NCBI GenBank assembly: GCA_904063045.1
Contig: CAJFCJ010000036.1
Span: 1 to 64,000 of the forward strand
Source: Dimorphilus gyrociliatus
Lineage: Eukaryota; Animalia; Annelida
DNA: 64,000 bases
Reading direction: 5' to 3'
The stretch's first letter is position 1; the number at the start of each line of letters is the position of its first letter. Below are positions 19,163-64,000 of the stretch, in pieces. The translations under genes were made by a program, and so were the position numbers. The notes under the pieces were generated by a model. It was not told the DNA's origin. It searched no databases and was given only the letters and a program-made list of their open reading frames with translations.

Positions 19163-22100
19163 ATGAAAATATTAATAAATGCAATATTCTTTTTCAAATA
19201 TGTTAATTTACAACATTTGATATCTTCCGATGAAGTTATATACAAGTTCTTTAATGAAAGTAAACTATGCAATGAATACTCTTGCAGAGGACATCTTAGA
19301 ATTCAATCAAAAGATGTTGTCTTTATACCATCTTTCATTGAGAGTAGAAAGAATAGAAACTCATTTGGATCAATTTGCATTAAAATGGGATACGATTATT
19401 TTAACGCATTCGCCTATGAATGTTCATATAAAAGTTTTAAAAAATATCAAAAATTTCAATTTGTATGTGTAAAACTCACGGAATGTTTTTTCCTTACTAA
19501 GGAATTTGGTCTTGATAAAAACCAATATTCATACTGTCTTCAATGCTTTAAAGTAAATAAAGTTTGTGAGTACAATAATTCAAATGATTCACATACATTT
19601 CAATCAATTTTGAAAAATTCTCTTCTATTTATTCAAGTATTATATACAACAATAGTTGAAAATGATATTCAACATAAACAAGATCAAATTTATACAAGAT
19701 TTAATAGAACATCTTACCTTTTTACATTAACAATTAAGGATAAATTAAGGGAATTATGCCTACAAGGATTTCATTCAAACAAGGCTAATTTTTTAAAAAA
19801 AGATGAAATAATTCATCCAAATGATACATTTATCTTTACAGATAAATTTGAAAGAATTGCTTTTAATAAGAGTCTTAACTACAATCTTAAATGTCCTAGA
19901 TTTACAAGATTCAATAGAAAATTTCAATTAATCAATTCATCAGTAGTTTATGAAGGATTTGTCAACAGTAGTGCTGTCTTATCTTGGATAAATCATACTC
20001 CCAAAATGATAACTCTTAATCTATATAAAACTCTTAATTCATCATTTATAAATTATGTAAGAGCAGGATGTGAACAATTTTCCCTCTCATTTCTAGGCAA
20101 TCCGTATTTAATAGCAAATAAAGAGTACTCTTCTCAAAGTGCCTTCTTAAAGCCTGAAAGTACATATTGCTTTGGAAAATCTCTAAAACTTTCCGAATGC
20201 TATTTCAAATACGAAGACAGTTATACTCCAGTTACAATGGTCTCTTTACAATGTTCAAAGAAAGTGAACATCACGAAATCTTCAATATCTTTAAAAACAA
20301 TTATTCACGGTTCCCTCTCTATCTTTTATAAATAATCCTTAAAAAATATTCCATTGTTAACTTTCTTTAGGCTATGAATTACATTTTTTGCAAATTGAGC
20401 CTATATACTCAATTAATGATGGTGAAATTTTTGGATTATTAATTACAAAACATAGAGGTGTTTGGTTTGATGTATCAGCACATAAATTTACAAGACATAC
20501 AGCAAATGTAAGTTTATATAATAGTCTTTACATATTAATAACTTTCAAATGCTATCAGACAATTTGCTCAACTTTTGGCTACACATCTGGATATTTGTCA
20601 TACTTCAAGAGCGATAAAATGGTATTAAGAGGACAGATATTTTCAATAGCCTGTAGTAGAAATGCAACGACGCTTCACGATTGCTCTTTTGAAAATTTCT
20701 TTCATAGAAAATTATATTATCATCTTTTTCGCAATTATATTCTTGAAACTAAGCTAAGATGTTCAATGGAGAAGCGTCTAGGTCGAATTATTTCAAGTTT
20801 ATTCCATAAATTAGAATAATAAACAAAAAAAAATATATTCATCTACAGATTGTACTGATATTGCAGAGGCAAAGACAGCATTTTCTATTGAATACAACTG
20901 TTACTATCTCTTTCAAACTAAAGAATTAGCAACTATAGATACTCAAAGAGAATATTGTAAAAATTATGATTTAAAACTGTTTTCACCATATTCAAATCTT
21001 GATATAATAAGAATTCACCATTTGAGTAGCACTGTCTGGTATAAACAATATTATTTTGGTATTATTCAAAGACTCTTTTGTAAATATCTCTCTTTTTTCA
21101 ATTAACAAAAGTTTTTTCAAGGTATTGGCATAAAGAAAAAAATGATACACAAATATTGGGAAATCGATATAAACGAGTACAACATACCAATAGCTTTAAT
21201 AGAAAAAATGTGGAATACTAACCAGTAAACCTGTCTAATTATTTTACTTGGTTTCATAAACTGTTCTAAATCAATACAAAGGGATTTTAGAGAGAAAGAC
21301 TCTTGCGTTTATTATAAAGCAGAGATAGATAAACTACAGTTTTTCTATAAAGACTGTGACAAATTCCAGAGTAAAACTTTCATCTGCAATAGTCATATTG
21401 GTTTGTCAAATATTGAAAGAATCTTAACCTTTACTACTCTATTTATCTTTTTAGATCCAACACCCAAAAGTCCAGAAATCAGATTATGCAATGACAATCA
21501 AATACAATCAGAAGGTGTTGTTTGTAACAATTACACCTTTCTCTGTAAAATTGACAAGATTTGCATCAGTGCAACTTTAAAATGTAACGGAAATATTGAT
21601 TGCTTTGATAAAACTGATGAAAACAATTGTTCATACCAATATAAAAAATTTATTCATCCAAAAACCAGAAATCTTATCAATTCTTTTTACCTGTGTGATT
21701 TTTTTCAAAATTATCCACTAGGAGAGGATGAAGAGTTTTGTTGTATAGATTAATAAATTCTATCTATGATTTTTCTATCTATATTAAAAATGTTATCTTA
21801 TCTATTTATAGCATTTCCAAACTGTAAAGATACTGAAAAGTAACTTATTCAATTGTATTTAAATTCTTTTGAAAAACAACAAAAAATAATTACAGGAAAT
21901 GCTCAAATTATGAATGTATCAATTCAGCAAAATTCTGTGATAATAACAGAGATTGTGTTGATTTTAGTGATGAAAATTGCTCTCAAGGTTTGTTTAAATG
22001 AATATCAAAAATTGAAAGGAAATATGTAGAATTGGATCTTTTTAAAAGGAATTTGTGGTGAACACCAATTCAAATGTTCAAGTAGCAAGTGTATTCCAAA

Positions 22101-24759
22101 ATTTTATAAATGTGATATGACAGCTGATTGTGAGAATTTAGATGATGAGAATAATTGTAAATTAATAAAAAATTTAAGGGATTCTGCTAATTATTCTTGT
22201 TTGATAAAATACAATTCTGCTAATCATTTTCTCACAAAAACACATTCCCCTTTTGATGGTTTGAAATCATGTCCTATTGAAAATACTTGCAAATGTGGAC
22301 AGTTGAAATGTAGAAAATATCATTACTGTGTTGAAATTGCACAAATTTGTGATGGTATTTGGCATTGTTTAGAAGGAGATGATGAAATATCTTGCAGTAA
22401 AAGATCTTTATTATAAAAAGAATGATAATACATTTATTTTTACAAAATAGATGAATTTAAACCTCAAGGATTTTTCAAGTGCAATCATCAAACTAAATTT
22501 CTACTTTTATCTCAAGTTTGCGATGGTATACTGGATTGTTTAACTGGTTGTGATGAAATTCTCTGTGAAAAAATTCAATGTCCTATTTCATGTAAATGTG
22601 AAACCCCAATTCAGATTGAATGCACTGATACAACACCAAAAAGTCTTCACCAAGTAAAACATTTAAAAATTCAAAATCCAATTGAAATTTTAGAAGAACA
22701 ACAAAGAAATAAAAGTATAAATTATAAATTGACAATTTTAAATTTAACATCCGGAAATTTAAATTTACAAAATACTTTATTAAAGAATTTTCAAAATTTA
22801 AAAATAGTTGATCTAAGTAGAAATAAGTTTAGTAGCTTCTCTTCAAATATATTTGGCAATTCATTAAATTTACATTATTTGGATTTAAATTGGAATTTTA
22901 TTAAGAAAATTTCTAGTTTGTCATTTAAAAATTTAAAAAATTTATTCTATTTAAAAATATCTTACAATGGTTTAAAAATATTAAAAAAGCATTCTTTCAA
23001 ATACAATCAATTACTATTTCATTTGGAATTAGTTGGAAATGAAATTGAATGGATAGAATATGATATTTTCTCATTTTCCAATAGTCTAGAAACAATGTCA
23101 ATATTTATGAAAAAATATTATTTACATAGATTGAAAAGAGATATTTTAAAAAATTTAAAAAATTTAAAATATTTACAAACAAGCCATAAACAATTTTGTA
23201 ATTATGCAAACAGTTTTAGTAGATTAGAAAGTTGTATTTGGAAATATTCAATAAGAGATTTTAATAGAAATAATATATTATTAACCATTATAAAATATCT
23301 TATATCAATAATATGCTTTCTCTCAATTACATTTCTAATTTTACATTTGTTTACAATTTTTAAATGTAAACATTTAAGAAAACACCAAATTATTTTAAAT
23401 ATTTGTCGTATCGTTACCGATTTTTTAATATTGTTACATTTAATAATTTCAACTTATTTAATTGATTTTGAAAATGGAGATGTTGGTAAATATTATGACT
23501 TGTGGATAAAATCAAAAATATGTGTCTTTTCTCATTTTTTAATCAATTTTTCAATATTATTTATATATTCTATCAATTTTCAAATATATATTTTGGAAGT
23601 TGTGTCTATAAATAGAAATATTCCAAAAAGTTTCTTTCAATTATCAATTACCTTACCATTTCTACCTTTCTTATTATCTATGATAATCAGTTTGGTGTTA
23701 TTACTACTTTTTGAGGTAAATATACCTTATGATATGAATATTATGTGCAAATTCTTTTAAAAAAATAGACTAGTTTCATAAACAATTACTATGAATGTTC
23801 AGTATTGTTTTTAACATATAGAAAAAATTTATCAATATATATCTACGCTACTTTGTCATTACTTGTCATTTTCTTACCAGTTTTCTTTACAAGTTTCCTA
23901 TTAATCGTTAAAACATTTAAAAAGTTGAAAACTACACAAAACGAAAGGATAATTATTTATCAGCCAATTGTGTTATTTTTCAATTTTCTATCATCACAAA
24001 TCTTTGGTAAACAATGGAAAAATAAAAAAAAAATTGAAATTTACCAAAAAAATGTCTATTTGTAGATGAAATTTTTGCAGAAGATAAATTAATTGAAATT
24101 AGATATATTAAAGTTTTAATATTTACAATTGCTTTATTCAACTTTACACATTTTTTTAAATTTCAAGAAATTAAATTATTTTATTATCAATATATGGAAT
24201 CTTATAAGTAAAGTATTTTTCTTTATTTTCTTCATTTACAATATATACTTTTTATAGAAAGGAATGTGAAATGTCTATATATAAAGAGCAAATTTTTCCT
24301 GGTATGAATCAACATACACACCTTTCTCTCTCTCTCTTTTGCATCTATTTAAATATTCTATTAATATTTACAGTGATAAATGGCTACCTTCATTGTATTT
24401 CTTGGGAAGAACAACTTCAATTCTCAGTTAACAACCTTTGTAAAAATCTTTTCCTACTGAAAGAAACAATTAAGAAAATTACTGATTTTATCATTTTTAT
24501 CAATGAAAGAAATATTTCCTTGAATGGTGATATGATTAATATCTTTGATATTAAATCTGTATGATACACACCAATATTGTTTGGGATGAAAAATTAAGAT
24601 AAAATACAAATTTTTCTTTTCCTTATTCAGGGTTATTCTAGAAATCTTTTGAAATATGTTTGTATCAATGATAAGAGAAAATGTAATGTAATTGATATAG
24701 GCCTACTAGCAAAAACCCTACTACAAAAATATCATACTATGAATTCTATCAGAAAATAA
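19163..24759 (+). CDS. Giant GRL101/LGR-type receptor A: SRCR-like x3, CTLD, LDLa repeats, LRRs, divergent 7TM, pseudokinase-like tail
   Basis: Signal peptide at 19163, SRCR cysteine patterns, CTLD exon near 20850-21050, LDLa repeats (CNGNIDCFDKTDENNC etc.), LRRs in ORF 22729, and ECL1 W-x2-S-x2-C. Tail exons at 24258-24301, 24374-24558 and 24631-24759 splice in frame. Confidence 0.8.
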
Positions 24760-24886
24760 TGAAATATGGAACTATTTCAATAAATATAAAGTTTTACACT
24801 AAATATGGCCAATTTTGTTCAATTTAATTAGGTCATTATTATACTATTAAGTTAGATTTGTTAGTTTACTATAAAGAACAATTATA

Positions 24887-25072
24887 TTTTTTTAATAACA
24901 TGCCGAAAATTTAAAAATTGAGTGGAAACTGGTATAAAGAGAATAAGATAGACCATTAGCAACAGTTGGGTTTATTTCTCAGGGTGATATTTAAAAAGAT
25001 TAGATAAAATTAAGGGCTAGGTTAGGGTTAGGGTAAAACCATAGATTTTTGTAGCTGTTTTCTGCCGCAACC
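24887..25072. mobile_element. Degenerate copy of the 9676 MITE family
   Basis: GGGCTAGGTTAGGGTTAGGGTAAAA followed by TTTTCTGCCGCAACC, resembling the 9676 right end. The left end is degraded and the possible TSD matches at only 8 of 9 bases. Confidence 0.5.
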
Positions 25073-25122
25073 GAATTATATACTGTTACAATTTTCATTA
25101 CATTTGCAAAAAAAATATAATC

Positions 25123-25144
25123 AAATTTGTCACGTGACAAATTT
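25123..25144. promoter_or_regulatory. 22-bp perfect palindrome centred on an E-box (GTCACGTGAC)
   Basis: AAATTTGTCACGTGACAAATTT, ~90 bp upstream of the receptor B ATG. Confidence 0.45.
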
Positions 25145-25230
25145 ATTTTATTGACAAAGGCAATATTTTGATTGTAATGAAATGTTTATGATAAACTAGT
25201 TTTCACTATCTTTAGGTGTAACAACTGAAA

Positions 25231-28200
25231 ATGAAAATTATTCAACTGAATGTTAATCTTATATTAAAGATAGTCATCTTTTCATTTTTCAAGTTTCATA
25301 GATGTAACAGTCAAGCAAAGGTAGTAAGATTTTGTCATTTTTGAAATATTTATCCATTTTACATATTTTTTTTTCAAGATTGTAATTAGTAATTTCTTTC
25401 TGAAATATTTAAATATTCACAATAGAACATGTTCAATGACTCATTGTTATGGTACATTATACATAGAAAATAGACAAATCTACAATACAATATCAATTGA
25501 GTCAAGGAAATTTTTGAATATTTTCTGCAAAAAAGCAGGATATGAAAATATCGATGTCGATGCATTTGTCTTTAAAACAAGCAATTCTAACAATGATTAT
25601 AATCCACATAATTTTCATTATGACGTAAATGAAGATAAGGTTTATGAGATGGTAGATTATCCTAAAATATTTCTTCCTATGTATATTAAATGTCCTTTAA
25701 TGAATACAACATGTAAAAACGTTCTTTATTTATCAATTTGAATATTCAAAAGAAAAAACGCTTTTGCAGATTATTACACTGCTTTTGAACAGATATCTAA
25801 CTTGAGTAAATTTATTCCAGTATTTAAAAGATCCAACAACACTTCAAATCCTTATTGTCTACTTCATAAATCAATTGAAAAATGTGATAATATTTTAAAA
25901 TTTTCTAAAAGTTTCTTCCATAAAGATGTTATGAATATTTTTGATTTTAATAATGAAACATTGCCAATCTGTTCTAATGACTTTTGTAAATCTGTGAATA
26001 GGCCTACTAATCAGTTTAAATGGATTAGAAAATGGCCAAATTTTAACGTTTCCTATTACACAAAACCAACAGATAGCGAAATGCTTATTCTGGTTGAATA
26101 TTCAAAACATTCTAATAGATATATACCAGTTATTTTTCAATTTAAAGACAAAGACGTTTTCTATAATAATTTAATAACAGTTTGCAAACATTATTCAAAA
26201 CATTTTATAAAACTTTATCAAGGAGAGAAGACTTTTGAATATTCAAAATTTTGGTCTCTTGAACAAAGTGAAACAATTTCAAAAGTTTTAACTTGTTTAA
26301 ATGTTGAAGAAAACTTGAATGAATGTAGAAAAGTTGAAGAGCAATTTAGATATTATGATCATATGATGCTAAGTGTGAAATGTTTTGATAAACCATTGAA
26401 AGAGTTAAAGAATTCTTCAAGTAATTTCATTGACATTGAAAAACCATTATTTAAAATTCAAATTTGCTTTTCTTTTCTAAGATTTGAAGTTTAGATTAAA
26501 ATCTAATGATGATAACAATTTTCTCGAATCAACAATGTCAATTGGAAATTTGTCTAGTTTTACAGGAAGTTTACAAGTTAAATACGATGGTTATTGGTAT
26601 TATATTTCAAATTTTGATATTGGCCAACACGAATTGAATGTTATTTGTAAATATTTCAATTTTAATAGTGGAACAATTTATAAACAGGAAAAAAATAAAG
26701 AGGATAATGACATTTACATATTTTCAATCAAATGCTCAAAAACTGTTCATAAATTAAATGAATGCAAGATGGAAAACTTTATGGAACTTTGGTTAGATGA
26801 AATAGTTGGATTAAGGGTAGCTTGTTTCAAAAATTTTCATACATGTCAAAAATCAATTAAAGGAGCTACAAAAGTTTTGAATTATTTAAATAGTTGCTAT
26901 TATATTTATAAATTCAATAAAGTAATAAATTATAATGATGGACAACAATTATGCAAAGATAATGGACAGGAATTGATTGGTATATCAAGTCAAGATGAAT
27001 CAAGATTCATTGAAAATAGTCTAATATCTATTTATTTTAATTCTACTAAGAAAACAATGAAAAATTTACTTTCATTTAAAAGAATTTGGAAAATTCCAGT
27101 TGGTTAGTTTAAATTTTACTTTCTTTATAATCATTTTGTTTAATATTAATTAGATAACATTTCCTTACAAAAGGTTTTTCATCAACTACAACCGAAAATA
27201 ATTTTGGTTTGATAAGGAATACAGATAATATTTCTCATAATTTTGTCGGAATGTGGTCAATTCAATATGAATTAGGGCAACAGTAAACATCCAATTTACT
27301 TTGATGTTACAATACTACACCTAAAACCTAAGATAGCTCTCTCTCTCTCCCTCTCTCTCTCTCTTATAACTTAAATAGGCCAACAAACAATTTTCACTTA
27401 CACCTCAAATGTAAAAATATAATTGATTTGTGCGTCTCAATTCAACAGATGTTTATTAAAAAATTCCGAACCCAGAACTGAATGGTATGACGAACCTTGC
27501 ACATATCTAAAGAAATATTTGCACTTGAACTATTATGAATTATTGTCAATAGAATGCAAAAAAATGTTATTCAACTACATTGTTTGCGAAAAGAAAACGG
27601 GTAGCAAAATATTTTCAATTTTTTAAAAGAAAATTAATAAGAGAAGACTGTTACACTAGATTTTTTGGATTTAAGAAAAATTCATAAAGTAAATATCAAG
27701 AAAGTGGTAAAGTTACAACCAATTGTTCAAAGCCGAATTGAATTTTATATGAAAGACTCCAGACTATTTTTTTGTAAATTTTCAAAAGAATTTATAAGTT
27801 ACTATTACAAATGTGATGGAAATTTAGATTGCGCTGATGGTTCAGATGAAGGAAACTGCCCTTTTGATAAATTTTCATTATTTCAATGTGATGGAGTTAA
27901 AAGTATTAGTATTAATTTAATTTGTAATCATATGCAAGATTGTTTAGATGGAAGTGATGAACATAACTGCTGTAAATATCAATAAGATATACATATTATA
28001 TATTCATTATCATCATCATGATCACTCTTTCTTTTTCTTTCCATAGATTTTCCTCCTTGTAAACTTGGGTTTGTATATTGAAATAACGAGTCTTTAAAGG
28101 GACTTTTTTTTCTAAAAAACTACTCTCATTCCAGAGAGAAACAATGTGAAAATCAACAATGTTTACCCAAAGATCTATTTTGTGATACAAAGTTTGATTG

Positions 28201-31200
28201 TTATGATAAAAGTGATGAAAAATTTTGTACCAAATCTGATATTTTTGACAAAGGTATTTAAAAACTAAAGATATATTTTTTTTTATTTAAATATTGTAAA
28301 CTAAACAAAAGATAAAATTGATATATGTGGATCAAAATTAATTTCTAAAAAACAACTATGTGATTTTAAACCTGATTGCATTGGTATGAATGATGAAAAT
28401 TTACCAACATGCAATTGTAAAGTTAATTTTTTTAAAAGTTACTTATCTATTAAAATTTACAAAAACTGAAACTAGCTGAAGAAACTGATTGGGGAAAATC
28501 TAAATGTCATAGTATCTACAATTATGATAAATTTGGAATATCAGTATCTAAATTTCATAGTTTGTATATTTATTCTATTTTTATTCATATTTTCATTGCT
28601 TTTTTTTTTAAAAACAAATAATTAAAGGAGAATTTGAAAAATATTTTTTTGAAAGTAAAACTTATGGTATGTTTCATTCTGTTGTTTTAGGACTATTGAG
28701 TTTATTACAGATTTTAAATTATGTATTTTTTAAACATAACAACCAACTCTTATTAAAATCATTCAGGAATTGTCTGCCATTTATTCTATAGAGGAACTTA
28801 TATACTTCAATTCCCAAGCACAAATCCACCATTTAATATATATAAATCGTGTAACATGAGGAAAAGTTCTTGTTTATATGGATATTATAAATGCGCCGTT
28901 TATGAGTATTGTATATTAAGCGAAAGTATTTGTAATGGAAAAAGTGATTGTATCTTGGGTGATGATGAAATGAATTGTGGTATGTTTTAAAGTAATTCAA
29001 CGACCTTTTCTTTAAAAAAGATCCACTGTCATAGATGATTTACACTTGGAATATTTCTATAAATGCCATAATTCAATAGTTTTTATTCCTCTGCATTTAG
29101 CTCTTATTGAACGTTACAACAATAAATTTATAAACCCTGCAAGTAGAGCTTGCCCAGAGAATGAAAATTTACAATCATGGATGCTTAGATCACATGATCC
29201 CTGTCCAGAAAATTGTATCTGCAATTCCATGTTCTCTATTAACTGTACAAATGATTTTGAAATGATGGCAAAGAAAAACTTTTATTTTTTCAATGCCATA
29301 AAATTATACAATTTGAAAAATCCTTTAGAAAAATCATTGAAATATTTAACAAATAACACAAATTCCAAACTATTTAAACTGTTTATCTATAATTCAAACT
29401 ATTCATTAGCAATCAACTTATCACAATACATAAATCTAAAATTTTTGCATATAGAAAATAATTTAATGTTTACAAAAATTATTAAATATACTTTTCATAA
29501 TTTCAAATATTTACTACATTTGAATTTAAGGAAAAATGAGATAGAAACAATTGATGAGAGATCATTCCATAACCTTCAATTCTTAATTTCTCTTGATTTA
29601 TCTTATAATAAATTCTCTTATCTTTCTAAAGATTTATTCAAATTTTCAAACAATTTGAAAATATTAATTATTGAGCATTTAACTTTGAAATATTTGAAGA
29701 CTAATTCATTTTTCTACTTGAAAAATCTTTATAGATTAGAGATGAATAAAACAAAAATCTCCTCACTAAATAATATAAAATCAAGTATTTTTAAATGGAA
29801 TTCAAATTTAAAAGTGCTAAGAAGTGATTTTAATACATTTTGCTGTTTTGCAAAAATGTTTAGAAAGATGACTCAGTGTCTACCAAAAGAGACAATCTAT
29901 TCATTTTGTGCAGAATTAATTTATTCATATACATTGAAAAGTTGGGTTTTATTGTTTGTTTCTTTTTTTAAAACATATTTACTACCAGTTTTTGTTTTTC
30001 CCTCTATTTTCTCTTCAATTAGTTATAGCTTATATATTAGCAGCTTTTGGCCTATTTAATAATTTTCTATCAATTATTATTCAAATTGTTAAGTTTAAAA
30101 GGCGATCTATGCTGTTCTATCTAATGTTGACATTATCCGATTTCTCATGTAATCTTTATCTGTTGGCAATTTGTATTGTGGATAGGATTTATGGGGAAAA
30201 CTATCAGGAAAACGACTATTACTGGCGGCATAGTAAATTCTGCTTTGTCTTGGGCTTAGTTAGTAGTTCTTCCTGTTTAATATCAATTTTTAGTTTGGTA
30301 TTAATAACTTTTGAAAAGTTTGCTGCAATAAAACAATATGATAAATTTTTGCATTTAAATTACTTATCCATATCTCTTGTAATAGGATTGATATTTGTAT
30401 TTTCAATTGGATTATCCGCCTTCCAATACTTGTATTTTGACGTAAATAGAAATTATTTGAATACCTGATAAATATCCCTAATGAAATATATATATTTTTA
30501 AAGGATTTTTCAGCTAGATATCCATTATGTTTCTCTCTTCATATTACAAATGAGAAAAAAATTGGTTGGATATCGGCCATATGCCTATTTTCAATATTAC
30601 CAACACTAGCTGTCTTTGTAATTCTTATCTTATATATTTTAATTTTTAAACAAGTTATTATATCTAGTAAAATATTATCCTATAATCAAATTACTGAAAG
30701 AATTAGGCAAATGTTTGCAAATGCATTTTTAATAGTTACAACAAACATTTTAACATGGATACCTATTCTTTTAATTAGTAAGAATTTTGCAGTTGTTCTT
30801 GTAGCAATTTTCTCATTTTTTTTAAACTAGGTATCATGGCTGCCTTTGGCAAAAGTCCATTAATAAAAGAAACTTATCAATGGATAATTATCATTATTAT
30901 TCCATTGAATTCATCGTTAAATCCGTTATTTCAAAATTGGTCAAATATACGTCGGCTATGGAGTAAGAGTAAGGCAGTTAAAAGGTTCTTTTTGTAAATG
31001 TAAATTTTCAATTTAAAATCTCGTTTTTTCTCGTTTGTTTAATCAGGCAAAAAATTCAAAAGGAAATGTTAATAACCAGCCGTCTAAGAGGTAAAATATT
31101 GTCACTAGAAATTTGGATCAGGTCTATCCAGTTTTAGTAAAATATAGATATTTAATTGCTACAGTTAAAGATCTATTTGAAAATGCCGCCAAATATGGTC

Positions 31201-31604
31201 TGTTTTTTAAAACTGGTAGAAAACAATACGAAAACTATCAAAACTCTTTAATCAATCATAAAATGATGAATAATTTTTATATAATTTTGAAATTTTCAAG
31301 AAATATTATGTATACAATCAAAAAACTTCATAATTTACATATATCTTTTCATCAATTGAATTTAGAATCTTTAAGATATCAGGTTAGACGAACAAACAAA
31401 AATTGAATTTTCAAGGTTTTGAATTGAATATTTTAGAGAAACGGCGAAAAAATATCATTTGTGATTTATATAAATCCCAAAGAGTTTTTATTAACTTTTC
31501 ACGAGATTAAATATAAAGAAGACATTGAAATTGTTGTCAAATTAATAAAAAACTATGTAAATAGACTATTAAAGTCATCTTTTGACTGGAACTTAAGAAT
31601 ATAA
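25231..31604 (+). CDS. Giant GRL101/LGR-type receptor B: SRCR-like x3, CTLD, LDLa repeats, LRRs, 7TM, pseudokinase-like tail
   Basis: Signal exon MKIIQLNVNLILKIVIFSFF. SRCR (GSLQVKYDGYW...NVICKYFNF), CTLD (NSCYYIY...QLCKDNGQELIGISS), LDLa (CDGNLDCADGSDEGNC), LRRs, WRHSKFC, FEKF, TNILTWIP, LNSSLNP. Tail exons at 31047-31090, 31138-31382 and 31437-31604. Confidence 0.85.
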
Positions 31605-31771
31605 AAGCACAGACTCTCAATCTATGATGTTTGTGTTAATTTTGTTACGTCTTTTTCAAAATAAACAATAATAAAAAACGCACAAAGTTAAAGACAATTA
31701 AATTTTTTTATTAATTAATATTTTTAAAGGCTCGCAGTGAATAATCAATTAAACTTTACCATTTACAATAT

Positions 31772-34700
31772 TCATTTCTTGTGTCTAAAAAAGATTTCTC
31801 TTTGAAGGAATTTTCTTAAAACTAATCCAAAATCTTTAATATTTGATTGAAAATCTCTTTCAGTTTCATATATTATAAATTTACTTGAAATGAAATACTC
31901 TTCTTCCTGCAAAGTATAGATTTTTTTTAAAAAAACAAAAGTATTTGATTATAATTACAATAAAAAAAAATAATTCTTCATCTTTGACCAAATGAACAAC
32001 ATAAGAATTTTTATGACAATAGGCAATAGCTGATGCCAATGATTTCATCAATTTTTGTATACCTATCAAGTCAGATGGTTGTTTATTTTTATCCATTGAA
32101 AATTCTAATAAATTTAACAAGCAGTTTGGTAAAATAAAATTTCTAGCTGCATTATTCATAAATTCTAATTCTAGATAAAAACATGGAAAATTTGAACAGG
32201 AACAAAATCTCTAGCAAACGATATACTTTCTCTTTGGATTTGATTGTTAAAAAGAGCTAGACTTTTATTTCTGAAAAACGAAAATTTTAGCCTATAAAAA
32301 TAAAATGAGGTGAAGAACCTTTTTTGAATTTGTATCGTTTGAAATCTTTTATATTTATTAATGATTTCTGATACTGTATACAATATTGGATTTATAACAG
32401 AATTAACTGGTAGAAGAAAAATTACAATCCAATTATAAACTTCATTTGTCAATTTGACAGTTGTTAGAATTGAAGCAAAACCTATTTTGATATGAAAATT
32501 GATACAATAGAGAAAAAAAAACTTTGGAGAAGGGATTAAGAGATTAGAACCTAATATTGAAATTGGTATCCAACATAATAGATTTGTTGAAACAATAACA
32601 ATTGCGCTAACTTTAACTTTATTGAATTTATATAATTTCGCTCTATTTGTATGAATCATGATACTTTCTTTCAACTTGACAACCATTAGAATGTATAGGA
32701 TCAATGTAGAAATTGAGAATAACATCATCCATACACCATAGATTATAAAAGAGAATATCCAGCCAACTGACCTTTCGCTTCTTACGTAGACAGTAAAACA
32801 TATTGGCATTTGATTGTAATATCTCTATTTATGAATAGAGTTTTTGAATTTATGCAAATGATATCTCTTTTCAACTTACGTCAAAAACGAATAGTGGAAT
32901 TATTGACATTAATATAGATAATGCAACTATGCATATTGCAATTATTGTTGTATTTAATAATGAAAAGAAACGATTTACTGGATAGGCTATAATCAGATAT
33001 CTTTCAATTGTAATAAAGAAGAGACTCAATGTTGAAAGTGATACTGAAAAACTGGATACAGATCCAATAAAAGTACATAGAGCACTTTGTCGCCAATCAA
33101 TATCATTCTCCATATAAACACCTCTATATTTTCTATCAACCGAAGCAATTAACATTACGTAAAGTGATGTAAGCAAATCGGAAAGTGCTAAACAGCAATA
33201 AAACAGCATCGATGTCCTTGAAAAGTGAATAATCCTATAGATTAACGATGAAAAATTACCCAATAAACCAACAATACCAATAATCCATACTAAAATTTGA
33301 AGGTGTTTCGATACTAATAAATCATTACAGGTAGAAAAATTCGATTTTTCAGGTATGCATTTGACATTTTCACCAAATAATTTATTCAAGAGACAACAAA
33401 TTAAAAAGTAATCACTTTCCATAAAACTAAGCTTTTTCAACAATTGAATATTACTTTTAATACCTTTATATGGTAATTTTGAACCCTTAAAATTTATCCT
33501 ATTAACGCTCTTTAATGATTTAAATGCGTCATTTTCAATATCAAATATTTCACAGTTAATTATTGTTAGATCATTCAAGTTTTTCAAATGTTTAAACATT
33601 ACACTACTCAAGTGAAATATCATCATTTTTTCAATATGAATACTAATTAATTGAGAAGGGAACGATACTATTACTAATTCCGTTGTGCTCTTTTTATTCG
33701 TTATATTTTTTAATATTAATATTTGAAGTAGATTCATTTTTTGGATTTTTGAATTTAAATTTATATTTGAATTTGATATGTTAATTAGTATTAAATTTGG
33801 AAAACAATTCAAAATATTTTCTTCAATTACGCTGCTAAACGTTATAGATAGGATAAGAAAATTGTGAAAAATCTTCATATTTGAATTTTTCAAATAGACA
33901 TATTCAAAAATCAATTTTTTATAATAATCACTTTCATAACTACTCAACTCTATTATCGCTCTATCATCATTACCATTTAAATTTTTTTGACAAACTATTG
34001 TAAATTCTCTTTTTAAATGTATACAATTTTTTAAACTTCTACCAATTTTACAATTCATTTCATCACTTCCATCTTCGCAGTCGAGTATTCTATTACAAAC
34101 CTCAAATAATGATATATACACACCGCTTTTACATTTGAAATTCATTTTCAGCGTAAAATTGGCTGTTGGTGAGCGATAATTAGATATTTGTGTGTGTGTG
34201 TGTTATAAATTATGACTGAATTTTCTATTAAACATACCTGAACAGTTGTTTTCATCGTCACCCTTTTCACAATCCCAAATTCCATTACAAACTTTGGTTA
34301 ATTTAACGCATTTCTTACTCCAATAGCATTGATATTCTCCGTAATTACATTTCTTCCTTTTACACATTCCGTCTCTTTGGGGTGTTTTGAACAGAAAAAA
34401 TGGCGTTTTGCAAGAATATGTTTTACTATTTGTACATTCTGTAAAAAACGTTTCAAATAAAGCCAATTTTTCATAAGTGAATGGACGAAGAAATGTGAAA
34501 ACCTCTCTTCAACATTTCAGTACAAAAACTGTAAATACTTGAATCGAATCTTGAACATCTTGAATTGTCAAAACATTGCGTTTCGTTGCGATGGCATAAG
34601 CCATTACAATAGTAATCTTGACAATAGTCTGGAAATTATTTTAAAGAAAGTAGAGCAGAAGAAAAATTCAAATTTTCAAATTATTTTACCTTCACTCCAA

Positions 34701-37700
34701 CCTTCTTCGTCGCTATTATCAAAGCAATGTTGATAATGATCAAATATATCTCTCTTTTCTATGCATTTCTGGTCTTTACATCTTGCAAAAAAGTTTTCAT
34801 TTTAAATATTCAAAAGAAAAGTTGATCTAGTTATCAACCAACCTGATGTTAGTCGGACATTTTTCGCGTTCTTTTACATTTGGACGTTACGTTATAAAAG
34901 ATATTTTGATTGTATCATACTTACCGCAAAATTCGTCTGCTCCAGACAAACAATTTTTCTTATAATCGCAAACAGAGAGAAAGTTAATTGTTTCGATTTT
35001 ACTACAAAAGAACATATGTCGTTCAAACAAACAATTCAATTCATCTTCCCCGCCAATGGGACAATCAATTTCTCCATCGCAAATGTAGATATAATTGATG
35101 AATATCTGAGAAATGACGCAATGGAACATATTGGTGTTATTATTAGAATTTGTCCAAATATTTAAAGATCCCGTTAATGATGTATCAATTTCTATTTAAA
35201 ATTGAATAAATAAGAAAAAGAAAAGAAGAGAAAAATCAATTATTAATCGATAATTACTTAATGATTGCTGACAAAAGAAAAGTTGAAATGTTCTATGACA
35301 ACTAACTTTTTCAATTGTTGAAATTGTTTGCTCTAGTCGATTTGTGTTTAATGCAAAACAATGAATTTCATCTTTTTTGAACAGATAGGTTTTTTCGTTA
35401 AAAGATAACTTTTTGCAGTCGTAAAGGTCGTTTTTAGACAGTAAACTAACTATATTTTCAATATAATCAATAGGATAGAGGGAGGAGGGAGCCGAAGTTG
35501 TATAAGTTTTATTAGAAATTTGGACGAGTCCATTTTCTAATGATAAATAAACACAAGATTTAGGTATTTAATATAGAAATAGATAAGATTAACTTGCGGC
35601 TTGGAACAATGAATTGATCTTGATAAGGATGATGCATTTGGAAAAATCTATAAATTGCTATGTGAATGTGATAAAAAGCAAAGTCAATTATCTCTAAATC
35701 TTTCTCTTTACAAATATTTCGAATGCTTTTTATAGATGTTTTATAATTCTTCGATTCAAACAAATAAAAACATCGATTATCGTAATAAAATGAAGATTTT
35801 GCACCAGTTTTCAATTCCTATTTTTATCCAATAGCATATATTTATAATCATTTGAACATTTTGTTCCAATTATCCCGCCCCCTTCCGCCCACTAAACCAA
35901 TAATTTAGAATTTAAAAGCTTTTTGGATAAAAATAGCAACAGATTTACAAATGTAATCATCCGTATTGTTCACTTTATTTGTTTTGTTCAATTTTGAAAA
36001 TGAAATGAATTTTTAAAGATTTAAAATGGCTTTTTTTTCATAAATTATTTAAATAAACTGTACTTTTGTCTTCTGCAATTGAAAAACACTTTATCCTGGA
36101 ATGTCCTGCAAAGAGAAGGCTTATTAAAGTCTTAGAGAGAGAGAGAGGCATTCACTTCGAGGATTATTGATTTCAAGAGAAGAGTAGAAAATTTCATTCT
36201 TGTCAATACAATCTTTATGTGTTTTTGCATTTGAATTACATTTAAATTTAATTATACGAAAAGTGTTTATGAACTCAAAGTTCAAATCTAAAGTTAATAA
36301 TCCAGTATTAAAACCAAAATATTGGCATAGCACCTTAATTTCTGTATAATTCAAATAAGCAGGGTAAATATTAAAAAAATAATGGTCATATGACATTTGA
36401 ACAACTCCACTTATAGACAAAGATTCTGTTTTATTTTGCCAAAGTCTCATGGAAAAATCTGAAAAGATTAAAAATAAAATTCTTTCTTTCTTCTTCTTCT
36501 TCTTTTTCTAACCTTTTGCATCATGCCTTTCTTCACACCTGAACTTTATAGTGTATATCATGTTAGCTTTTCTTAGGTAGCAATTGTTTGAGTCAACTTT
36601 TCCTTCTATACATTCCAAACCAATGAATTTAGTTGGATCAAATAACACGCAATCTCTCGTCGTTTGTTTCGAGTACAAAACTCTTGCTTCCATTGGTGAA
36701 AAAGTTTTTGATTGCAGGCTGCATATCAAATCAGCTGCTAATTCGGGGGACACAGTGGAAACAAAACTTCTAGGTATATTTCCAAACGTTCTAGAAGCAA
36801 AAGACTCTGGTTGCTTGAAAAAGAAATCAACATTTGAAAGTGATGGTGATAATGCTCATAGAAATCAAATATTTAGACAATTACCTTTGAAAATATATGA
36901 TTTTCTCGATAAAATGACTTTAAACTTAAATCTATTTTTTGAAAAATGGGATTATTGAAGATAATCAACTGTAATTATGATTTTGTTTTTTAACCATGTG
37001 TTTGTTTATAAGTACAAGAAGATGTATTAAATATTGTTTGTCCATAAATGAAACCATAGTGATATTGAACATTTGAAGAAACATCGATTTTCTCTGTAAT
37101 ATAAAATTCAGATTTAGAACAGATCTCCTCAGTTGAACTCTTGTTGTGAAAAATTTGATATAATGAGCCATTTTTTAAAATGGGAATATATCTTATAAAA
37201 TCATTTGTATATGTAAAAATATCTTGAATGTAACGAATTTAAATGAAAATAGTTAGTTTGTAAATATTTCAATTCAAAAACTTACAAACTGCATTGGTTT
37301 TATAACATTTTATACAGACGGCTTCAAATTTTCCGGCATAGACATGAAATATATGACTGAAAAAGAAAATAAATACAAGATGATAAACTTGAATTAAATT
37401 TGGACGGTCGCCATTTGTTTTTACATTTTACAACATTTTTTGCTTCTTTCCAAGGAAAATTTATGCAAAATACCTGAATAGCATTGAATTTACTGAAATA
37501 ATTATAAATGAAAACTGGTAATAACTTAACATACGGAAAGAAACCTTCTTCGGACAAGCTTCATAGTACATGTGTATATTGTTGCATGCTAATATCTCAT
37601 TGCTAAATGCTAGAAGTTGCTTATCGTAGTCTTCACAACCAGTATGCACAAGATATGGTTGTAAGCCCGATCGGGTCAAAATAGCTTTTATAGGACCATA

Positions 37701-37850
37701 GACAAAGGTGCTTGTTTCTTTATAGGTAATAATTTTAAAATGTTTAGGTTGCACCTTGATGGAATACAACTGATGAAATTGACAGTTGATTTTATTCAAA
37801 AGAAACACTGAAATATTGAAGAGGATTATCGCAATATTTTCACTTTTCAT
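31772..37850 (-). CDS. Giant GRL101/LGR-type receptor C: SRCR-like x3, CTLD, LDLa repeats, LRRs, 7TM, pseudokinase-like tail
   Basis: Signal MKSENIAIILFNISVFLL, SRCR and CTLD exons, LDLa (CDGEIDCPIGGEDELNC; CNRILDCEDGSDEMNC), LRRs, WRQSALC, IERY, TNLLCWIP, PVNSVINPILY. Tail exons at 32270-32227, 32170-31959 and 31906-31772. Confidence 0.88.
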
Positions 37851-50601: not shown

Positions 50602-51348
50602 ATGATTTCACTCAAGTACGGTTTCACCCCGATACAGATTCAGCCCTATTCCTTTCAACTGAATGATTCGTTAGCTTCTTCAGCAGCCTCTTCACATTGC
50701 TGATTGGCTCTCTGAATCAATCTGATAATCTTATATATAACTGATTTTTTATATTTTACTTTTTCATCTTCTCCTATTGACTCTTCAACTATAATAGTGT
50801 CATGTTTATTAAGTTTTTTTTACACCGCATAGAGACTGAATGTCTTGAACTGACAGTAAATTTTCTTGTGTTGTATGTCTTATAATTAGGAATGTTGAAT
50901 GCTTATATTACAATCTTTTAGCAAAAGTGATTGTTTATAATATTTCATCATGAAAATTTTTTACATATTTATTCAAAAATTCAAATATATGATGAAGATA
51001 AAGAGAATACAAATGTAACAGGTTTTCATATCTAAAAGGAAGTAGCTGAAAAGTCATTTCTTATCCACACTATGATTCTTAATCATTGCAACAATCCCCA
51101 TTTCTAAATTTAGGAGCTGAAATCTCTTTAACTGTCTCTTTATTGAAAGTCTTTATTTCATATAAAACACTTGTCTCAGTTTCAGAAAATCATCAAAAGA
51201 ATATACAGGAATATGGAATGCTTTTAAGAAATTTTCTGCAAAATAAAGTGGAATTTATGAAAAATTAATGCCATACATCAATATGTTTGCCTGTGTGTAT
51301 TTAGTAAAAAAATTAATATAGTGGACAGACATTATCATTTTGGATCTA

Positions 51349-52257: not shown

Positions 52258-52779
52258 CTTTCACCTCAAACATATTTTTAATGCAATGATACAAAATTAC
52301 TGAAGCATAAAATGCTAAACTCTACATATGACAAGAATAATTGATAATAATATCACCATGGCAACACTGCCTTCAAATGTTTATAAAAATAGGATAGATC
52401 AATATTTCCTATCTGGAATTTTTATTAAAAGTACTTAGATTACAAGTAATTTATCAAAAGCTAGATTATTCTAGATTATTCACAGAACAAGATAAAATTT
52501 TGAAATAGTTCAAAATAGATAGGCTTAAAGATAGATTGTAGATGCCATCATTAGTCAATTATTACTCAAATTTGTTGGTAGTAATATACCTATTGCAGAA
52601 ATTGTGTTAAATGTTACTTTGTAATGTTGGAATATTGAAATTGTAAAAAGTTTGTTTACTAATATTGTTTTTAGCAAACACTACAATTACAACTATTACA
52701 AATAAACTCTAATTTTATCAACTATTCGTTTATTAAAAATTAAAGTCCATTAGTCATGCAAGATAAATAAAGGTAAATC

Positions 52780-62846: not shown

Positions 62847-64000
62847 TAAATAATGATTTCACTATATTTTCAAAAACAAAATAAAAACAAATTAGGAAAC
62901 ATAATGAAAGGGAAATTGGTACATTTTCAAAATTTCATTGACCAATTAGTTTATATTCAAATAAATTTTTGTCTATAAAATTTCTTGTATTGTTTTATTG
63001 AAAATTGATGAAAAATCTATTGAGTTTGTAAACCAGAAATGTTTTCTAAAAAGCATTTTTGAGTAAGAGGAATTGCTTTGTTACTTCCTTTGTGTTTGGT
63101 AGTTAATGTTTATGAATTTTGAGTGAAAACTAAATCGAAGTTTTTGAATCAAACTTTGATTGAAAAGTCATTTTAGAGCTGTATTTTGCTTTAGATAGAG
63201 ATTGTATAAATTTCTGAGCAATATTTAGGCACTCTGAAGATCAATTCTAATGAAACATTCATTATTGATAGAGCTTTCATTGCAGCAGTTGGCATTGATA
63301 AAATTTTAAACGAATATTGTCTATCTGAACAATCTAGGAATGAACTGAAAATTACTAATACAATTTATAACAACTATACTGAAAAATGCACAGATATAGT
63401 GAAGAGAGGTCAGGACAGGTATTATACAGCTTAATTAGAGAACATGAAAGAAAAGAATCAAAATATGTACCTTGAAATGAGAAAAATTATTAAAAACTGG
63501 TACATTTTTTCTGAGTGAATGTGTAGTAAGTGTATAAATAAGGGGACGATTTAAATCCCTTATGGTTACGCTTTAACCCATGTACGGTTTCACCTGCTTC
63601 CTTCCCCCAACTGGATTGTAGTACTAATAACAATTTAAAAAAAATTTATTATAATACTAATATTTATTCATTTTCTGTCTAAAGCAGTTTTTTTTCTTAA
63701 GATGGTTCTAACTGGAAGTCCAAATGCAACAATATCAGTTTTTTCTTCTATATTAGTCTTTAATTTAATTGAAGTCAATTTTAAAAAGTATATTGCTGGT
63801 TCTGCACTTTTTTCTGTAACAGTAATGTGTTCTAAGTCAATATTTCCAGCTATTACAATTTTGAAAATATTAGAGTAAAAGTTTCAATAGACAGAACACT
63901 GTTTTGAAACACTAACCACAATCTATTTCATCTTTTCCATTATCACAGCCTTCTTTTAAATTGCATACATGCTGATAATATATTTGAGTATTTTAAGTAC

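What the first reader, a model, noticed from the sequence alone, without database searches (positions are those of the whole stretch)
19163..37850. Three LGR/GRL101-type GPCRs share a hidden, spliced pseudokinase-like cytoplasmic domain
Seen in sequence: after TM7, each receptor has three short GT-AG introns in identical phases (2, 1, 0). The first tail exon is exactly 44 nt in all three (A 24258-24301, B 31047-31090, C 32270-32227), and all exons join without stops. The tails align to protein-kinase C-lobe elements. Helix E/catalytic loop: C LMKSLASAIAYCHKNSYVVHLVKDEELF, B FSRNIMYTIKKLHNLHISFHQLNLESL, A IKKITDFIIFINERNISLNGDMINIF. Subdomain IX (consensus SDVWSFGVVL): C SNIKDFGLVL, A CNVIDIGLLA, B EDIEIVVKLI. 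Established: HRD, DFG and the N-lobe VAIK lysine are needed for catalysis, and none is recognisable here. Typical LGR tails are short. Inference: these are 7TM receptors fused to a catalytically dead kinase half-domain that could act as a built-in scaffold, comparable to pseudokinase adaptors in innate immunity. The ORF track splits the tails into unrelated fragments, so automated annotation may miss them.
Basis: partly seen in the sequence, partly recalled or inferred. Interest (0 to 1): 0.9.

Follow-up and report, generated by a model that had tools for sequence, protein, structure and literature searches.

The report
GRL101-type receptors with dead half-kinase tail
Three neighbouring hormone-receptor-like GPCR genes end in small spliced exons encoding a conserved, catalytically dead remnant of a protein kinase, a tail also found from corals to molluscs and spiders and not described in the papers I could search.

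Summary
Behind TM7, each of the three LDLa/LRR/7TM genes has three short GT-AG introns (phases 2, 1, 0), a 44-nt mini-exon, and open tail exons ending in a stop.

- A profile of about 115-residue tails from annotated GRL101-like receptors (molluscs, chelicerates, a hemichordate) hits only protein kinases in the PDB. The best hit is the pseudokinase VRK3, E 8e-8.
- AlphaFold models the tail at pLDDT 93. Two independent fold searches return only kinase or pseudokinase domains.
- Anthozoan relatives carry a full-length kinase-like domain without the HRD and DFG aspartates.

The window's tails match this tail family: C clearly, B weakly, A marginally. Jointly, hhalign gives 93.7% probability. Two of the three introns share position and phase with Patella and Priapulus genes.

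The tail is a truncated kinase C-lobe (alphaD to alphaF), with no N-lobe and no catalytic residues.

Caveats:
- RNA contigs cover only C's last two tail exons.
- Gene A has a frameshift upstream and has lost the GPCR switch motifs.
- Function is inferred only.
- First-stage notes of this scan flag the same idea at eight or more other loci of this genome.

I found no published description.

The parts
31772..37850 (-). Gene C, a GRL101-type LGR (LDLa + LRR + 7TM + tail). It is the canonical copy, with ERY, CWIP and NPILY motifs.
   Evidence: Pfam LDLa/LRR/7tm_1 on 32871-34145. Spliced RNA joints at 32478/32548, 32824/32880, 34162/34238 and 34438/34503. Motifs read.
32319..32478 (-). Gene C, TM7 exon (NPILY); ends in phase 2
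32227..32270 (-). Gene C, 44-nt mini-exon (linker)
   Evidence: no RNA cover; counterpart is the 52-nt mini-exon in Patella
31959..32170 (-). Gene C, core tail exon: remnant of alphaD, alphaE ('AYCH') and the catalytic loop ('VVHLVKDEELFF')
   Evidence: Pfam Pkinase E 0.063, profile positions 91-122; tail-HMM alignment; RNA contig 31958-32151
31772..31906 (-). Gene C, last exon: beta-strand plus alphaF remnant ('SNIKDFGLVL'); stop TGA at 31774-31772
   Evidence: Best open frame of the whole window against tail HMM A3 (16.7 bits); RNA contig 31757-31908
30831..30984 (+). Gene B, TM7 exon (NPLFQ in place of NPxxY)
31047..31090 (+). Gene B, 44-nt mini-exon
31165..31382 (+). Gene B, core tail exon ('KKLHNLHISFHQLNLESL')
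31437..31604 (+). Gene B, last exon ('KEDIEIVVKLIKNY'); stop TAA at 31602-31604
24066..24207 (+). Gene A, TM7-equivalent exon; degenerate, with no NPxxY
24258..24301 (+). Gene A, 44-nt mini-exon
24374..24558 (+). Gene A, core tail exon
24631..24759 (+). Gene A, last exon ('CNVIDIGLLAKTLLQKY'); stop TAA at 24757-24759
   Evidence: 11.7 bits against tail HMM A2 in the scan of all open frames
23803..23814 (+). Gene A, start of the TM5 exon. Under the splice phase shared with B and C it reads Y-C-F-stop, and the rest of the exon is open in the +2 frame. This is a 1-nt frameshift in a T5 run.
63671..63883 (-). Tail-like last exon of a fourth gene ('EEKTDIVAFGLPVRTIL'). The gene body runs off the right end of the window.
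   Evidence: 19.7 bits, E 3e-5 among 915 open frames

Best explanation
Genes A, B and C are tandem, fast-diverging members of the GRL101-type (LDLa + LRR) branch of the leucine-rich-repeat GPCRs. Behind TM7 and a linker of about 35-50 residues, three small exons encode a domain of about 90-115 residues that descends from the C-lobe of a eukaryotic protein kinase. It comprises alphaD, alphaE, the catalytic-loop and beta7/beta8 region, and alphaF. The activation segment is deleted, and the N-lobe and alphaG-alphaI are absent.

The domain was inherited, not invented in this lineage.
- The same tail, with two of the same intron positions and phases, closes GRL101-like receptors of molluscs, chelicerates, a centipede, a priapulid and hemichordates.
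- Anthozoan relatives still carry a full bilobal kinase-like domain that lacks the HRD and DFG aspartates.

So the likely history is an ancient LGR-pseudokinase fusion that bilaterians trimmed to a compact half-domain.

Shown: the domain cannot bind ATP or catalyse, because the sequence has no glycine loop, no VAIK lysine, no HRD and no DFG.

Inferred: it acts as a folded docking or regulatory module tethered to the receptor's cytoplasmic face. It would recruit a partner, mediate receptor pairing, or gate access of G protein or arrestin, as other pseudokinase modules do.

In this window C is intact and transcribed. B is transcribed but has softened GPCR switch motifs. A is probably a recent pseudogene, or carries a homopolymer assembly error.
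For: Gene models and phases.

Link from the window to the tail family:
- HMM of 10 non-window tails (A2): C 21.3, A 12.1 and B 9.9 bits, all above the best of 3000 composition-matched shuffles (8.0).
- 43-sequence HMM (A3): C 25.6 and B 11.6 bits, both above all shuffles.
- hhalign of the three-tail profile against A3: probability 93.7%, E 1.9e-7, 74 colinear columns.
- In a blind scan of all 915 open frames of the window, the tail exons of A, B and C lie among the top seven under both HMMs.

Link from the tail family to kinases:
- The A2 profile against PDB sequences gives 368 hits at E<=1. All 60 listed are kinases. The best is the VRK3 pseudokinase (8.4e-8), followed by GCN2 in the region I take to be its pseudokinase domain (residues 386-438), BRAF, PERK, DAPK and SYK. 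With Nematostella added, IRAK4 aligns over profile positions 14-99.
- AlphaFold2 on A3: pLDDT 93.2, pTM 0.84.
- Foldseek against the PDB: the top 50 are all kinases, TMq up to 0.58.
- VIA-align wide search: the top 50 are all kinase or pseudokinase domains, Z up to 9.9, about 100-111 of 123 residues aligned.

Full-length relatives:
- Nematostella P0081 tail: Pfam PK_Tyr_Ser-Thr E 3.4e-6, above the gathering score.
- Oculina and Porites homologues carry a precomputed PF07714 hit together with 7tm_1.
- In these proteins HRD reads HN[A/S/N] and DFG reads GGF.
- The model's C-lobe is confident. Foldseek gives at least 500 kinase hits, with IRAK4 and tyrosine kinases at the top at about 1e-8.

Gene structure: the Patella gene has TM7 exon | 52-nt mini-exon | core exon | last exon, phases 0, 1, 0. 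Priapulus has phases 1, 0. The window has 2, 1, 0.

Constraint: among chelicerate pairs, identity is 53-71% in the 7TM, 4-24% in the linker and 41-60% in the tail domain.

RNA: C's two last tail exons are transcribed.
Against: - Direct Pfam evidence on the window's own tails is sub-threshold: only C, E 0.063. B and A give no hit, and A's score against the larger HMM falls within the shuffle range (8.2 bits).
- Pairwise similarity among the three tails is not significant.
- No read-level junction joins TM7 to the tail exons in any of the three genes.
- One contig over C's last exon extends 2 nt into the predicted acceptor and then has 5 unmatched letters. I cannot explain this.
- Foldseek E-values for the 123-residue model are only about 0.01.
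- The structure was predicted for a Haliotis tail, not for the window's proteins.
- Gene A carries a frameshift and lacks DRY, CWxP and NPxxY.
- Nothing tested here bears on function.
Confidence: 0.8

Rival explanations
1. The tails are relics without present function in this genome. The kinase-derived domain is inherited, but in these fast-evolving tandem copies (certainly A, perhaps B) it is drifting, and the open frames only reflect recent decay.
For: - A has a frameshift and stop at 23803-23814 and lacks all three GPCR switch motifs. B has EKF, TWIP and NPLFQ.
- Tail-HMM scores fall in the same order, C > B > A.
- The tails are not significantly alike pairwise.
- The structural His/Asp pair is incomplete: C has N for D, and A lacks both.
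Against: - In a 26% GC genome, unconstrained sequence acquires stops quickly, yet all nine tail exons are open and all 18 splice sites are intact.
- C is canonical and transcribed through the tail.
- The domain is conserved far above the linker in other lineages.
Confidence: 0.12
2. The tail exons are not part of the receptor mRNAs. Transcripts end at the read-through stops just after TM7, and the downstream open frames are 3' UTR or separate small transcripts.
For: No RNA contig bridges TM7 to the mini-exon or the mini-exon to the core exon. There is no cover of 32152-32348 or of B's tail.
Against: - Annotated homologues in the other animals examined have the same domain contiguous with TM7 in one protein.
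- The mini-exon, core exon and last exon layout is conserved in Patella, and introns 2 and 3 also in Priapulus.
- C's core and last exons are transcribed with boundaries at the predicted splice sites.
- The phases fit only if the exons are joined to TM7.
Confidence: 0.05
3. The kinase likeness is a chance resemblance of an amphipathic, helix-rich, lineage-specific tail with no shared ancestry with kinases.
For: - Individual short tails do not reach Pfam thresholds.
- Foldseek E is about 0.01 for the short model.
- Mid-range Z scores are common for small domains (note).
Against: - Every listed hit of the tail profile in the PDB is a kinase, down to E 8e-8, even without the cnidarian sequence.
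- All 50 top hits in each of two independent fold searches are kinases.
- Cnidarian orthologues have the full domain, recognised by Pfam.
- The most conserved columns are the alphaE His and the alphaF Asp and Gly. From general knowledge of the kinase fold, not tested here, these are the residues that tie the C-lobe core together.
Confidence: 0.03

Closest known systems
GRL101 / type C LGRs (Lymnaea GRL101, arthropod LGR5, relaxin receptors RXFP1/2)
   Same: LDLa modules, an LRR ectodomain and a rhodopsin-type 7TM. The best sequence and feature matches of the window's exons are GRL101-like and relaxin-receptor clusters.
   Different: Many proteins named GRL101 match the Patella query over only about 64-72% of its region, which stops before the tail. 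These include Lymnaea, Biomphalaria and Aplysia entries and most echinoderm and Acropora entries. The GRL101 paper I read (Veenstra) discusses the ectodomain and the 7TM only. The window's genes also carry SRCR modules; a C-type lectin module is reported only in an earlier scan note (s1-081936) and was not checked here. The genes are extremely diverged (about 30-35% identity to the best hits).
GPCR-kinase 'bigrams': oomycete and amoebozoan GPCR-TKL and GPCR-PIPK, choanoflagellate GPCR-TKL/K, sponge and choanoflagellate GPCR-TK
   Same: A 7TM receptor with a kinase-fold module fused to its C-terminus.
   Different: Those proteins carry complete kinase domains detected by InterProScan, on 7TM domains that PMC12716839 did not find to be related across lineages. 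That paper reports GPCR-TKs in sponges but in no other metazoan lineage. Here the 7TM is a class A LGR, the module is catalytically dead, and in bilaterians it is cut to half a domain. The distribution is cnidarians plus bilaterians.
Pseudokinase modules of signalling proteins (VRK3, JAK JH2, IRAK3, NFR5, PEAK3, PAN3, RNase L, the kinase-homology domain of receptor guanylyl cyclases)
   Same: Kinase fold without catalytic residues, used elsewhere for docking or allosteric control. Several of these are the top sequence or structure matches.
   Different: Those are complete bilobal domains, many of which still bind nucleotide. The bilaterian tail has no N-lobe, no activation segment and no alphaG-alphaI, so an ATP pocket cannot exist.
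Minimal kinases with a reduced C-lobe (Bud32/PRPK, Rio2)
   Same: They appear among the Foldseek matches to the tail model and share the compact core of alphaE, beta-strands and alphaF.
   Different: They retain the N-lobe and are active enzymes.

Membership tests
GRL101-type / type C LGR | LDLa module(s) plus LRR ectodomain plus rhodopsin-type 7TM in one gene | tested here: met
   Pfam Ldl_recept_a, LRR_8 and 7tm_1 on C; LRR_8 and 7tm_1 on B; LRR_8 on A; SRCR on B. phmmer finds 1174 relatives at E<=1e-10, and those with names are called GRL101-like.
GRL101-type / type C LGR | Class A activation motifs (E/DRY, CWxP, NPxxY) | tested here: inconclusive
   C: ERY, CWIP, NPILY (met). B: EKF, TWIP, NPLFQ (partly met). 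A: none recognisable, plus a frameshift (not met).
Conserved C-terminal tail domain of GRL101-like receptors (unnamed, defined here) | Profile match to the ~115-residue domain, placed at the C-terminus behind a variable linker | tested here: met
   C scores 21-26 bits. B scores 10-12 bits, above all shuffles. A scores 8-12 bits, which is marginal. Joint hhalign probability 93.7%, E 1.9e-7. 59 of 263 fetched LGRs have the domain, in nearly all of them at the C-terminal end.
Conserved C-terminal tail domain of GRL101-like receptors (unnamed, defined here) | Shared intron positions: a phase-1 intron before the core exon, and a phase-0 intron 3-4 residues after the 'vFv' strand | tested here: met
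   Window phases 2, 1, 0. Patella 0, 1, 0 with a 52-nt mini-exon. Priapulus 1, 0.
Eukaryotic protein kinase fold (Pkinase / PK_Tyr_Ser-Thr) | Significant profile match to the kinase family | tested here: inconclusive
   Direct: C's core exon hits Pkinase at E 0.063, 13.1 bits, against a cut-off of 31.7; A and B give no hit. Indirect, through the tail family: VRK3 at 8.4e-8 with only kinases listed. The cnidarian orthologue is above the Pfam threshold.
Eukaryotic protein kinase fold (Pkinase / PK_Tyr_Ser-Thr) | N-lobe (glycine loop, beta3 lysine, alphaC glutamate) | tested here: not met
   Only about 35-50 linker residues lie between TM7 and alphaD in A, B and C. The N-lobe is present only in the anthozoan relatives.
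Eukaryotic protein kinase fold (Pkinase / PK_Tyr_Ser-Thr) | Catalytic HRD aspartate and DFG aspartate | tested here: not met
   Absent in A, B and C, in the family consensus, and in the anthozoan full-length domains, where they read HN[A/S/N] and GGF.
Eukaryotic protein kinase fold (Pkinase / PK_Tyr_Ser-Thr) | C-lobe core topology (alphaD, alphaE, beta-strands, alphaF) with the alphaE His and the alphaF Asp/Gly | tested here: met
   Family model at pLDDT 93.2, and all top fold matches are kinases. His and Gly are nearly invariant in the family, and Asp is in the 10-sequence set. In the window, B has His and Asp, C has His with Asn for Asp, and A has neither. The window's own tails were not folded.
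GPCR-kinase bigrams (GPCR-TKL/K, GPCR-TK, GPCR-PIPK) | Complete, presumably active kinase domain fused behind the 7TM | tested here: not met
   The window's tails are half-domains without catalytic residues. The cnidarian relatives have the complete fold but are also dead.

The most novel reading that the evidence does not exclude
A branch of the LGR family, old enough to be shared by cnidarians and bilaterians, is a GPCR-pseudokinase fusion receptor. Anthozoans keep a full TK/TKL-like pseudokinase behind TM7. Bilaterians keep a self-folding C-lobe mini-domain that works as a built-in signalling adaptor, giving these receptors an output or control route beside G proteins. This would be the first GPCR-kinase-fold fusion described in eumetazoans, and it has expanded and diversified in the window's genome.
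Probability: 0.5. Interest if true: 0.85.

Novelty: new variant of a known kind. Interest (0 to 1): 0.72.

Why it matters
- GRL101-type receptors are orphan receptors, widespread in invertebrates, and proposed by Veenstra to bind insulin/IGF-like peptides. A conserved, folded cytoplasmic module is a concrete handle on how they signal.
- It would extend GPCR-kinase-fold fusions to cnidarians and bilaterians. A 2025 survey found them, among animals, only in sponges.
- It would be an example of a pseudokinase trimmed to a stable half-domain.
- Practically, standard domain annotation misses it. None of the 120 listed GRL101-like proteins has a Pfam kinase hit. A dedicated profile would re-annotate many receptors.

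Tried and rejected
- A word-indexed homologue search with C's 424-residue exon found nothing, probably because of the length filter and the divergence. The exhaustive phmmer search then worked.
- Pfam on ten individual tails: only the Nematostella tail hit a kinase family. Pfam on the six window tail exons gave only the sub-threshold Pkinase hit on C and a spurious La hit on A.
- Pairwise local alignments of the three window tails against shuffles were not significant, so the claim that the tails align to one another was dropped as independent evidence.
- Contigs encoding the closest Logan relative (P0001) stop before TM7 and give no tail.
- The Nematostella gene locus is not on record, so its introns could not be compared.
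- The organism could not be identified. Run and organism names are coded, and the Atlas search gave only family names.
- I considered that +51083-51265 might be a fifth tail. No LGR lies upstream, and the neighbouring minus-strand genes are intronless class A GPCRs with short tails, so it is left as a weak, possibly relic, hit.
- The active-kinase reading was rejected: there is no N-lobe, HRD or DFG.
- Left out: AlphaFold, HHpred or Pfam on the window's own spliced tails as whole proteins. A spliced sequence has no reference form and I did not type long sequences. The spliced tails were scored only inside scripts.
- Literature: the two GRL101 searches (with 'kinase domain', and with 'pseudokinase') and two broader searches (LGR with kinase-like domain, C-terminal tail and LDLa; pseudokinase with G protein-coupled receptor, C-terminal, fusion and LGR) found no description. 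A further search on GRL101, 'intracellular', 'C-terminal' and 'expansion' also found none.

Full report
**What is in the window**

The window is 26% GC and is a eukaryote with very short introns. Between 19163 and 37850 lie three genes. A and B are on the plus strand and C is on the minus strand, tail to tail with B. Their large exons carry Ldl_recept_a, SRCR, LRR_8 and 7tm_1 matches. An exhaustive phmmer search with C's 424-residue exon found 2564 relatives (1174 at E<=1e-10). Those that carry names are 'G-protein coupled receptor GRL101(-like)' or relaxin-receptor-like proteins of molluscs, chelicerates, hemichordates and cnidarians. The Atlas feature search agrees.

**Checking the observation**

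I rebuilt the region behind TM7 from the sequence.
- Each gene has a TM7 exon, a 44-nt mini-exon, a core exon of 185-218 nt, and a last exon ending in a stop.
- All nine introns are GT-AG and 48-74 nt long.
- At this base composition about one random codon in twelve is a stop, so open core exons of 61-72 codons directly behind each TM7 exon are not expected by chance.

One RNA run (X1, Logan contigs, depth about 2-6) could be laid on 29000-34900.
- It confirms five introns in the bodies of B and C.
- It covers C's core tail exon (31958-32151) and C's last exon plus stop (31757-31908), with nothing in the intron between them.
- The contig ends fall within 0-2 nt of the predicted donor and acceptor.
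- No junction-spanning sequence was reported. The 44-nt exon of C and the whole tail of B have no cover. Gene A could not be included because of the 6000-letter limit.
- One contig runs 2 nt into the predicted acceptor and then has 5 unmatched letters. I cannot explain this.

So transcripts of C clearly extend beyond the read-through stop at 32171, but the nine junctions remain predictions.

**What the tail is**

The relatives gave the key. Among the 150 best phmmer hits, eleven full-length proteins continue 150-350 residues past NPxxY and share an alignable block of about 115 residues. Its pattern is 'PP-x-x-Y/S-L-x-x-y-L ... L-x-I-a ... L-H ... G ... v-F-v ... D-I-x-x-F-G-x-L-v-x-x-m-L'.

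A profile of ten of these tails, with no window sequence and no cnidarian, was searched against all PDB sequences.
- It returned 368 hits at E<=1, and all 60 listed are protein kinases.
- The best is the pseudokinase VRK3 at 8.4e-8.
- The next include GCN2 in the region I take to be its pseudokinase domain, then BRAF, PERK, DAPK and SYK.
- The matched region is alphaD, alphaE and the catalytic loop.

With Nematostella added, IRAK4 aligns over profile positions 14-99, that is, through subdomain IX.

A 43-sequence alignment gave an AlphaFold2 model of a Haliotis tail with mean pLDDT 93.2 and pTM 0.84. The model has a short helix, a 20-residue helix, two strands and a long terminal helix.
- Foldseek against the PDB returned only kinases among its top 50: ULK2, DCLK1, PRPK/Bud32, CK1, RET, PIM1 and Rio2. 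TMq reaches 0.58 and E is about 0.01.
- The Foldseek-independent VIA-align search of 48,161 chains also returned only kinase or pseudokinase domains among its top 50: RNase L, Rad53, TBK1, JAK, NFR5, PEAK3, PAN3 and IRAK3. Z reaches 9.9, with about 100-111 of 123 residues aligned.

The most conserved columns are the His of the alphaE 'LH' motif and the Asp and Gly of the 'D-x-x-x-x-G' motif of helix F. From general knowledge of kinase architecture, not tested here, these residues tie the C-lobe core together rather than act in catalysis.

**Full-length relatives**

The Nematostella protein P0081 has 361 residues after TM7. These reach Pfam's threshold for PK_Tyr_Ser-Thr (E 3.4e-6, 27 bits against a cut-off of 23.1) and also match Pkinase over profile positions 33-125. 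Two coral homologues (Oculina, Porites) share 36-38% identity over this domain, and their precomputed Pfam list holds PF07714 next to 7tm_1, LRR and LDLa. In all three, HRD reads HN[A/S/N] and DFG reads GGF.

The model of the Oculina domain has a poorly supported N-lobe, because only three sequences cover it, but a confident C-lobe and the full order of kinase secondary-structure elements. Foldseek gives at least 500 kinase hits, headed by IRAK4 and tyrosine kinases at about 1e-8.

The short bilaterian tails align colinearly with the C-lobe of these domains. The simplest history is one old LGR-pseudokinase fusion, later cut down in bilaterians to alphaD through alphaF, with the activation segment deleted.

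**Do the window's tails belong to this family?**

- Spliced in a script and scored with the ten-sequence HMM, C, A and B score 21.3, 12.1 and 9.9 bits. The best of 3000 composition-matched shuffles scores 8.0.
- With the 43-sequence HMM, C scores 25.6 and B 11.6, above all shuffles. A scores 8.2, inside the top seven of 3003.
- hhalign of the three-tail profile against the family alignment gives 93.7% probability and E 1.9e-7 over 74 columns.
- In a blind scan of all 915 open frames of at least 30 codons in the window, the tail exons of C, A and B are among the top seven hits under both HMMs.
- Pfam's only hit on C's core exon is Pkinase, profile positions 91-122, at E 0.063. This is sub-threshold but falls in the right place.

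Gene structure adds independent support.
- The Patella vulgata gene has the same layout: TM7 exon, 52-nt mini-exon, core exon, last exon, with phases 0, 1, 0.
- The Priapulus gene has the last two introns in the same phases and positions.
- The phase-0 intron sits 3-4 residues after the 'vFv' strand in all of them.

Pairwise, the three window tails are not significantly alike. Their common origin rests on structure and profiles, not on their mutual alignment.

**State of the three genes**

- C has ERY, CWIP and NPILY, and it is transcribed.
- B has EKF, TWIP and NPLFQ. Its body is transcribed and spliced.
- A has none of these motifs. Under the splice phase shared with B and C, its TM5 exon reads Y-C-F-stop at 23803-23814, with the rest of the exon open in the +2 frame. 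This is a 1-nt shift in a T5 run. A is therefore a recent pseudogene, or there is a homopolymer error in the assembly.
- The tail-HMM scores fall in the same order, C > B > A.

**Constraint elsewhere**

In chelicerate pairs, identity is 53-71% over the 7TM, 4-24% over the linker and 41-60% over the tail domain. This is the pattern of a folded, selected domain on a floppy tether.

**How it probably works**

Shown: the tail cannot be an enzyme and cannot hold ATP, because there is no N-lobe, no glycine loop, no beta3 lysine, and no HRD or DFG aspartate.

Inferred: it is a compact protein-interaction or regulatory module held about 35-60 residues from helix 8. By analogy with pseudokinase modules (JAK JH2, IRAK3, NFR5, the kinase-homology domain of guanylyl cyclases), it could recruit a cytoplasmic partner, mediate pairing of receptors, or control access to the receptor core. 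I rate the identity of the domain at about 0.8-0.85 for C and the family, lower for B and A. I rate any specific function at no more than 0.4.

**Comparison with what is known, and novelty**

- Full-text searches for GRL101 with 'pseudokinase' found nothing.
- The papers holding both GRL101 and 'kinase domain' include Veenstra's work. The one I read mentions kinase domains only for the insulin receptor tyrosine kinase, and describes GRL101 by its ectodomain and 7TM.
- Three broader searches found nothing relevant.
- The 2025 survey of GPCRs in the relatives of animals states that GPCR-kinase fusions are known from oomycetes, amoebozoans and choanoflagellates, and that among metazoans GPCR-TKs were recovered in sponges only.
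- None of the 120 listed GRL101-like proteins carries a Pfam kinase hit. Only the two coral proteins do.

I therefore rate this as a new variant of a known kind (GPCR-kinase-fold fusions, and pseudokinase signalling modules), not a new category. Subscription literature and database domain annotations (CDD, InterPro superfamily calls) could not be checked.

**Earlier notes of this scan**

First-stage notes on the same genome propose the same reading at eight or more other loci, and another note covers the ectodomains of this very stretch. They are unchecked notes of the same kind of reader. I list them, but they are not evidence.

**Verdict**

The function remains open.

Noticed in passing
window 23803-23814 (+), gene A: Under the splice phase shared with genes B and C, the TM5 exon reads Y-C-F and then TAA. 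The rest of the exon is open in the +2 frame, which implies a 1-nt shift in a T5 run. Gene A also lacks E/DRY, CWxP and NPxxY. It is probably a recent pseudogene, or the assembly has a homopolymer error.
   Followed up: partly
window 63671-63883 (-): A fourth tail-like last exon ('EEKTDIVAFGLPVRTIL') scores 19.7 bits against the GRL101-tail HMM. It is the best or second-best open frame of the whole window. The gene body runs off the right end of the window.
   Followed up: partly
window 51083-51265 (+): A weak tail-like open frame ('NIQEYGMLLRNFLQ', 8-12 bits) with no LGR gene upstream on that strand. It may be a relic exon or a chance match.
   Followed up: partly
window 51352-52260 (-) and 53387-54367 (-): Two intronless class A GPCR open frames of about 300-330 residues with complete 7TM and short tails. 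They are paralogous to each other and unrelated to the LGR tail.
   Followed up: no
window 30057 / 32666 and 32546-32742, 33728-33924: RNA run X1 has high-depth contigs (58-78, against 2-11 elsewhere) that fit only partly. One of them joins 32666 to 30057 with 20 foreign letters between. They probably come from transcripts of other, more strongly expressed paralogues of this family.
   Followed up: no
proteins P0081 (Nematostella), P0264 (Oculina), P0265 (Porites): Giant anthozoan LGRs (2200-3300 residues) with CUB, MAM, lectin, LDLa and LRR ectodomains. After TM7 they carry a full-length kinase-like domain lacking the HRD and DFG aspartates. Nearest folds are IRAK4 and tyrosine kinases.
   Followed up: partly
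window 31906-31908 (-), RNA contig 'record 3': The contig over C's last exon extends 2 nt (AG) into the predicted acceptor and then has 5 unmatched letters. This fits neither the predicted spliced form nor the unspliced form exactly.
   Followed up: no
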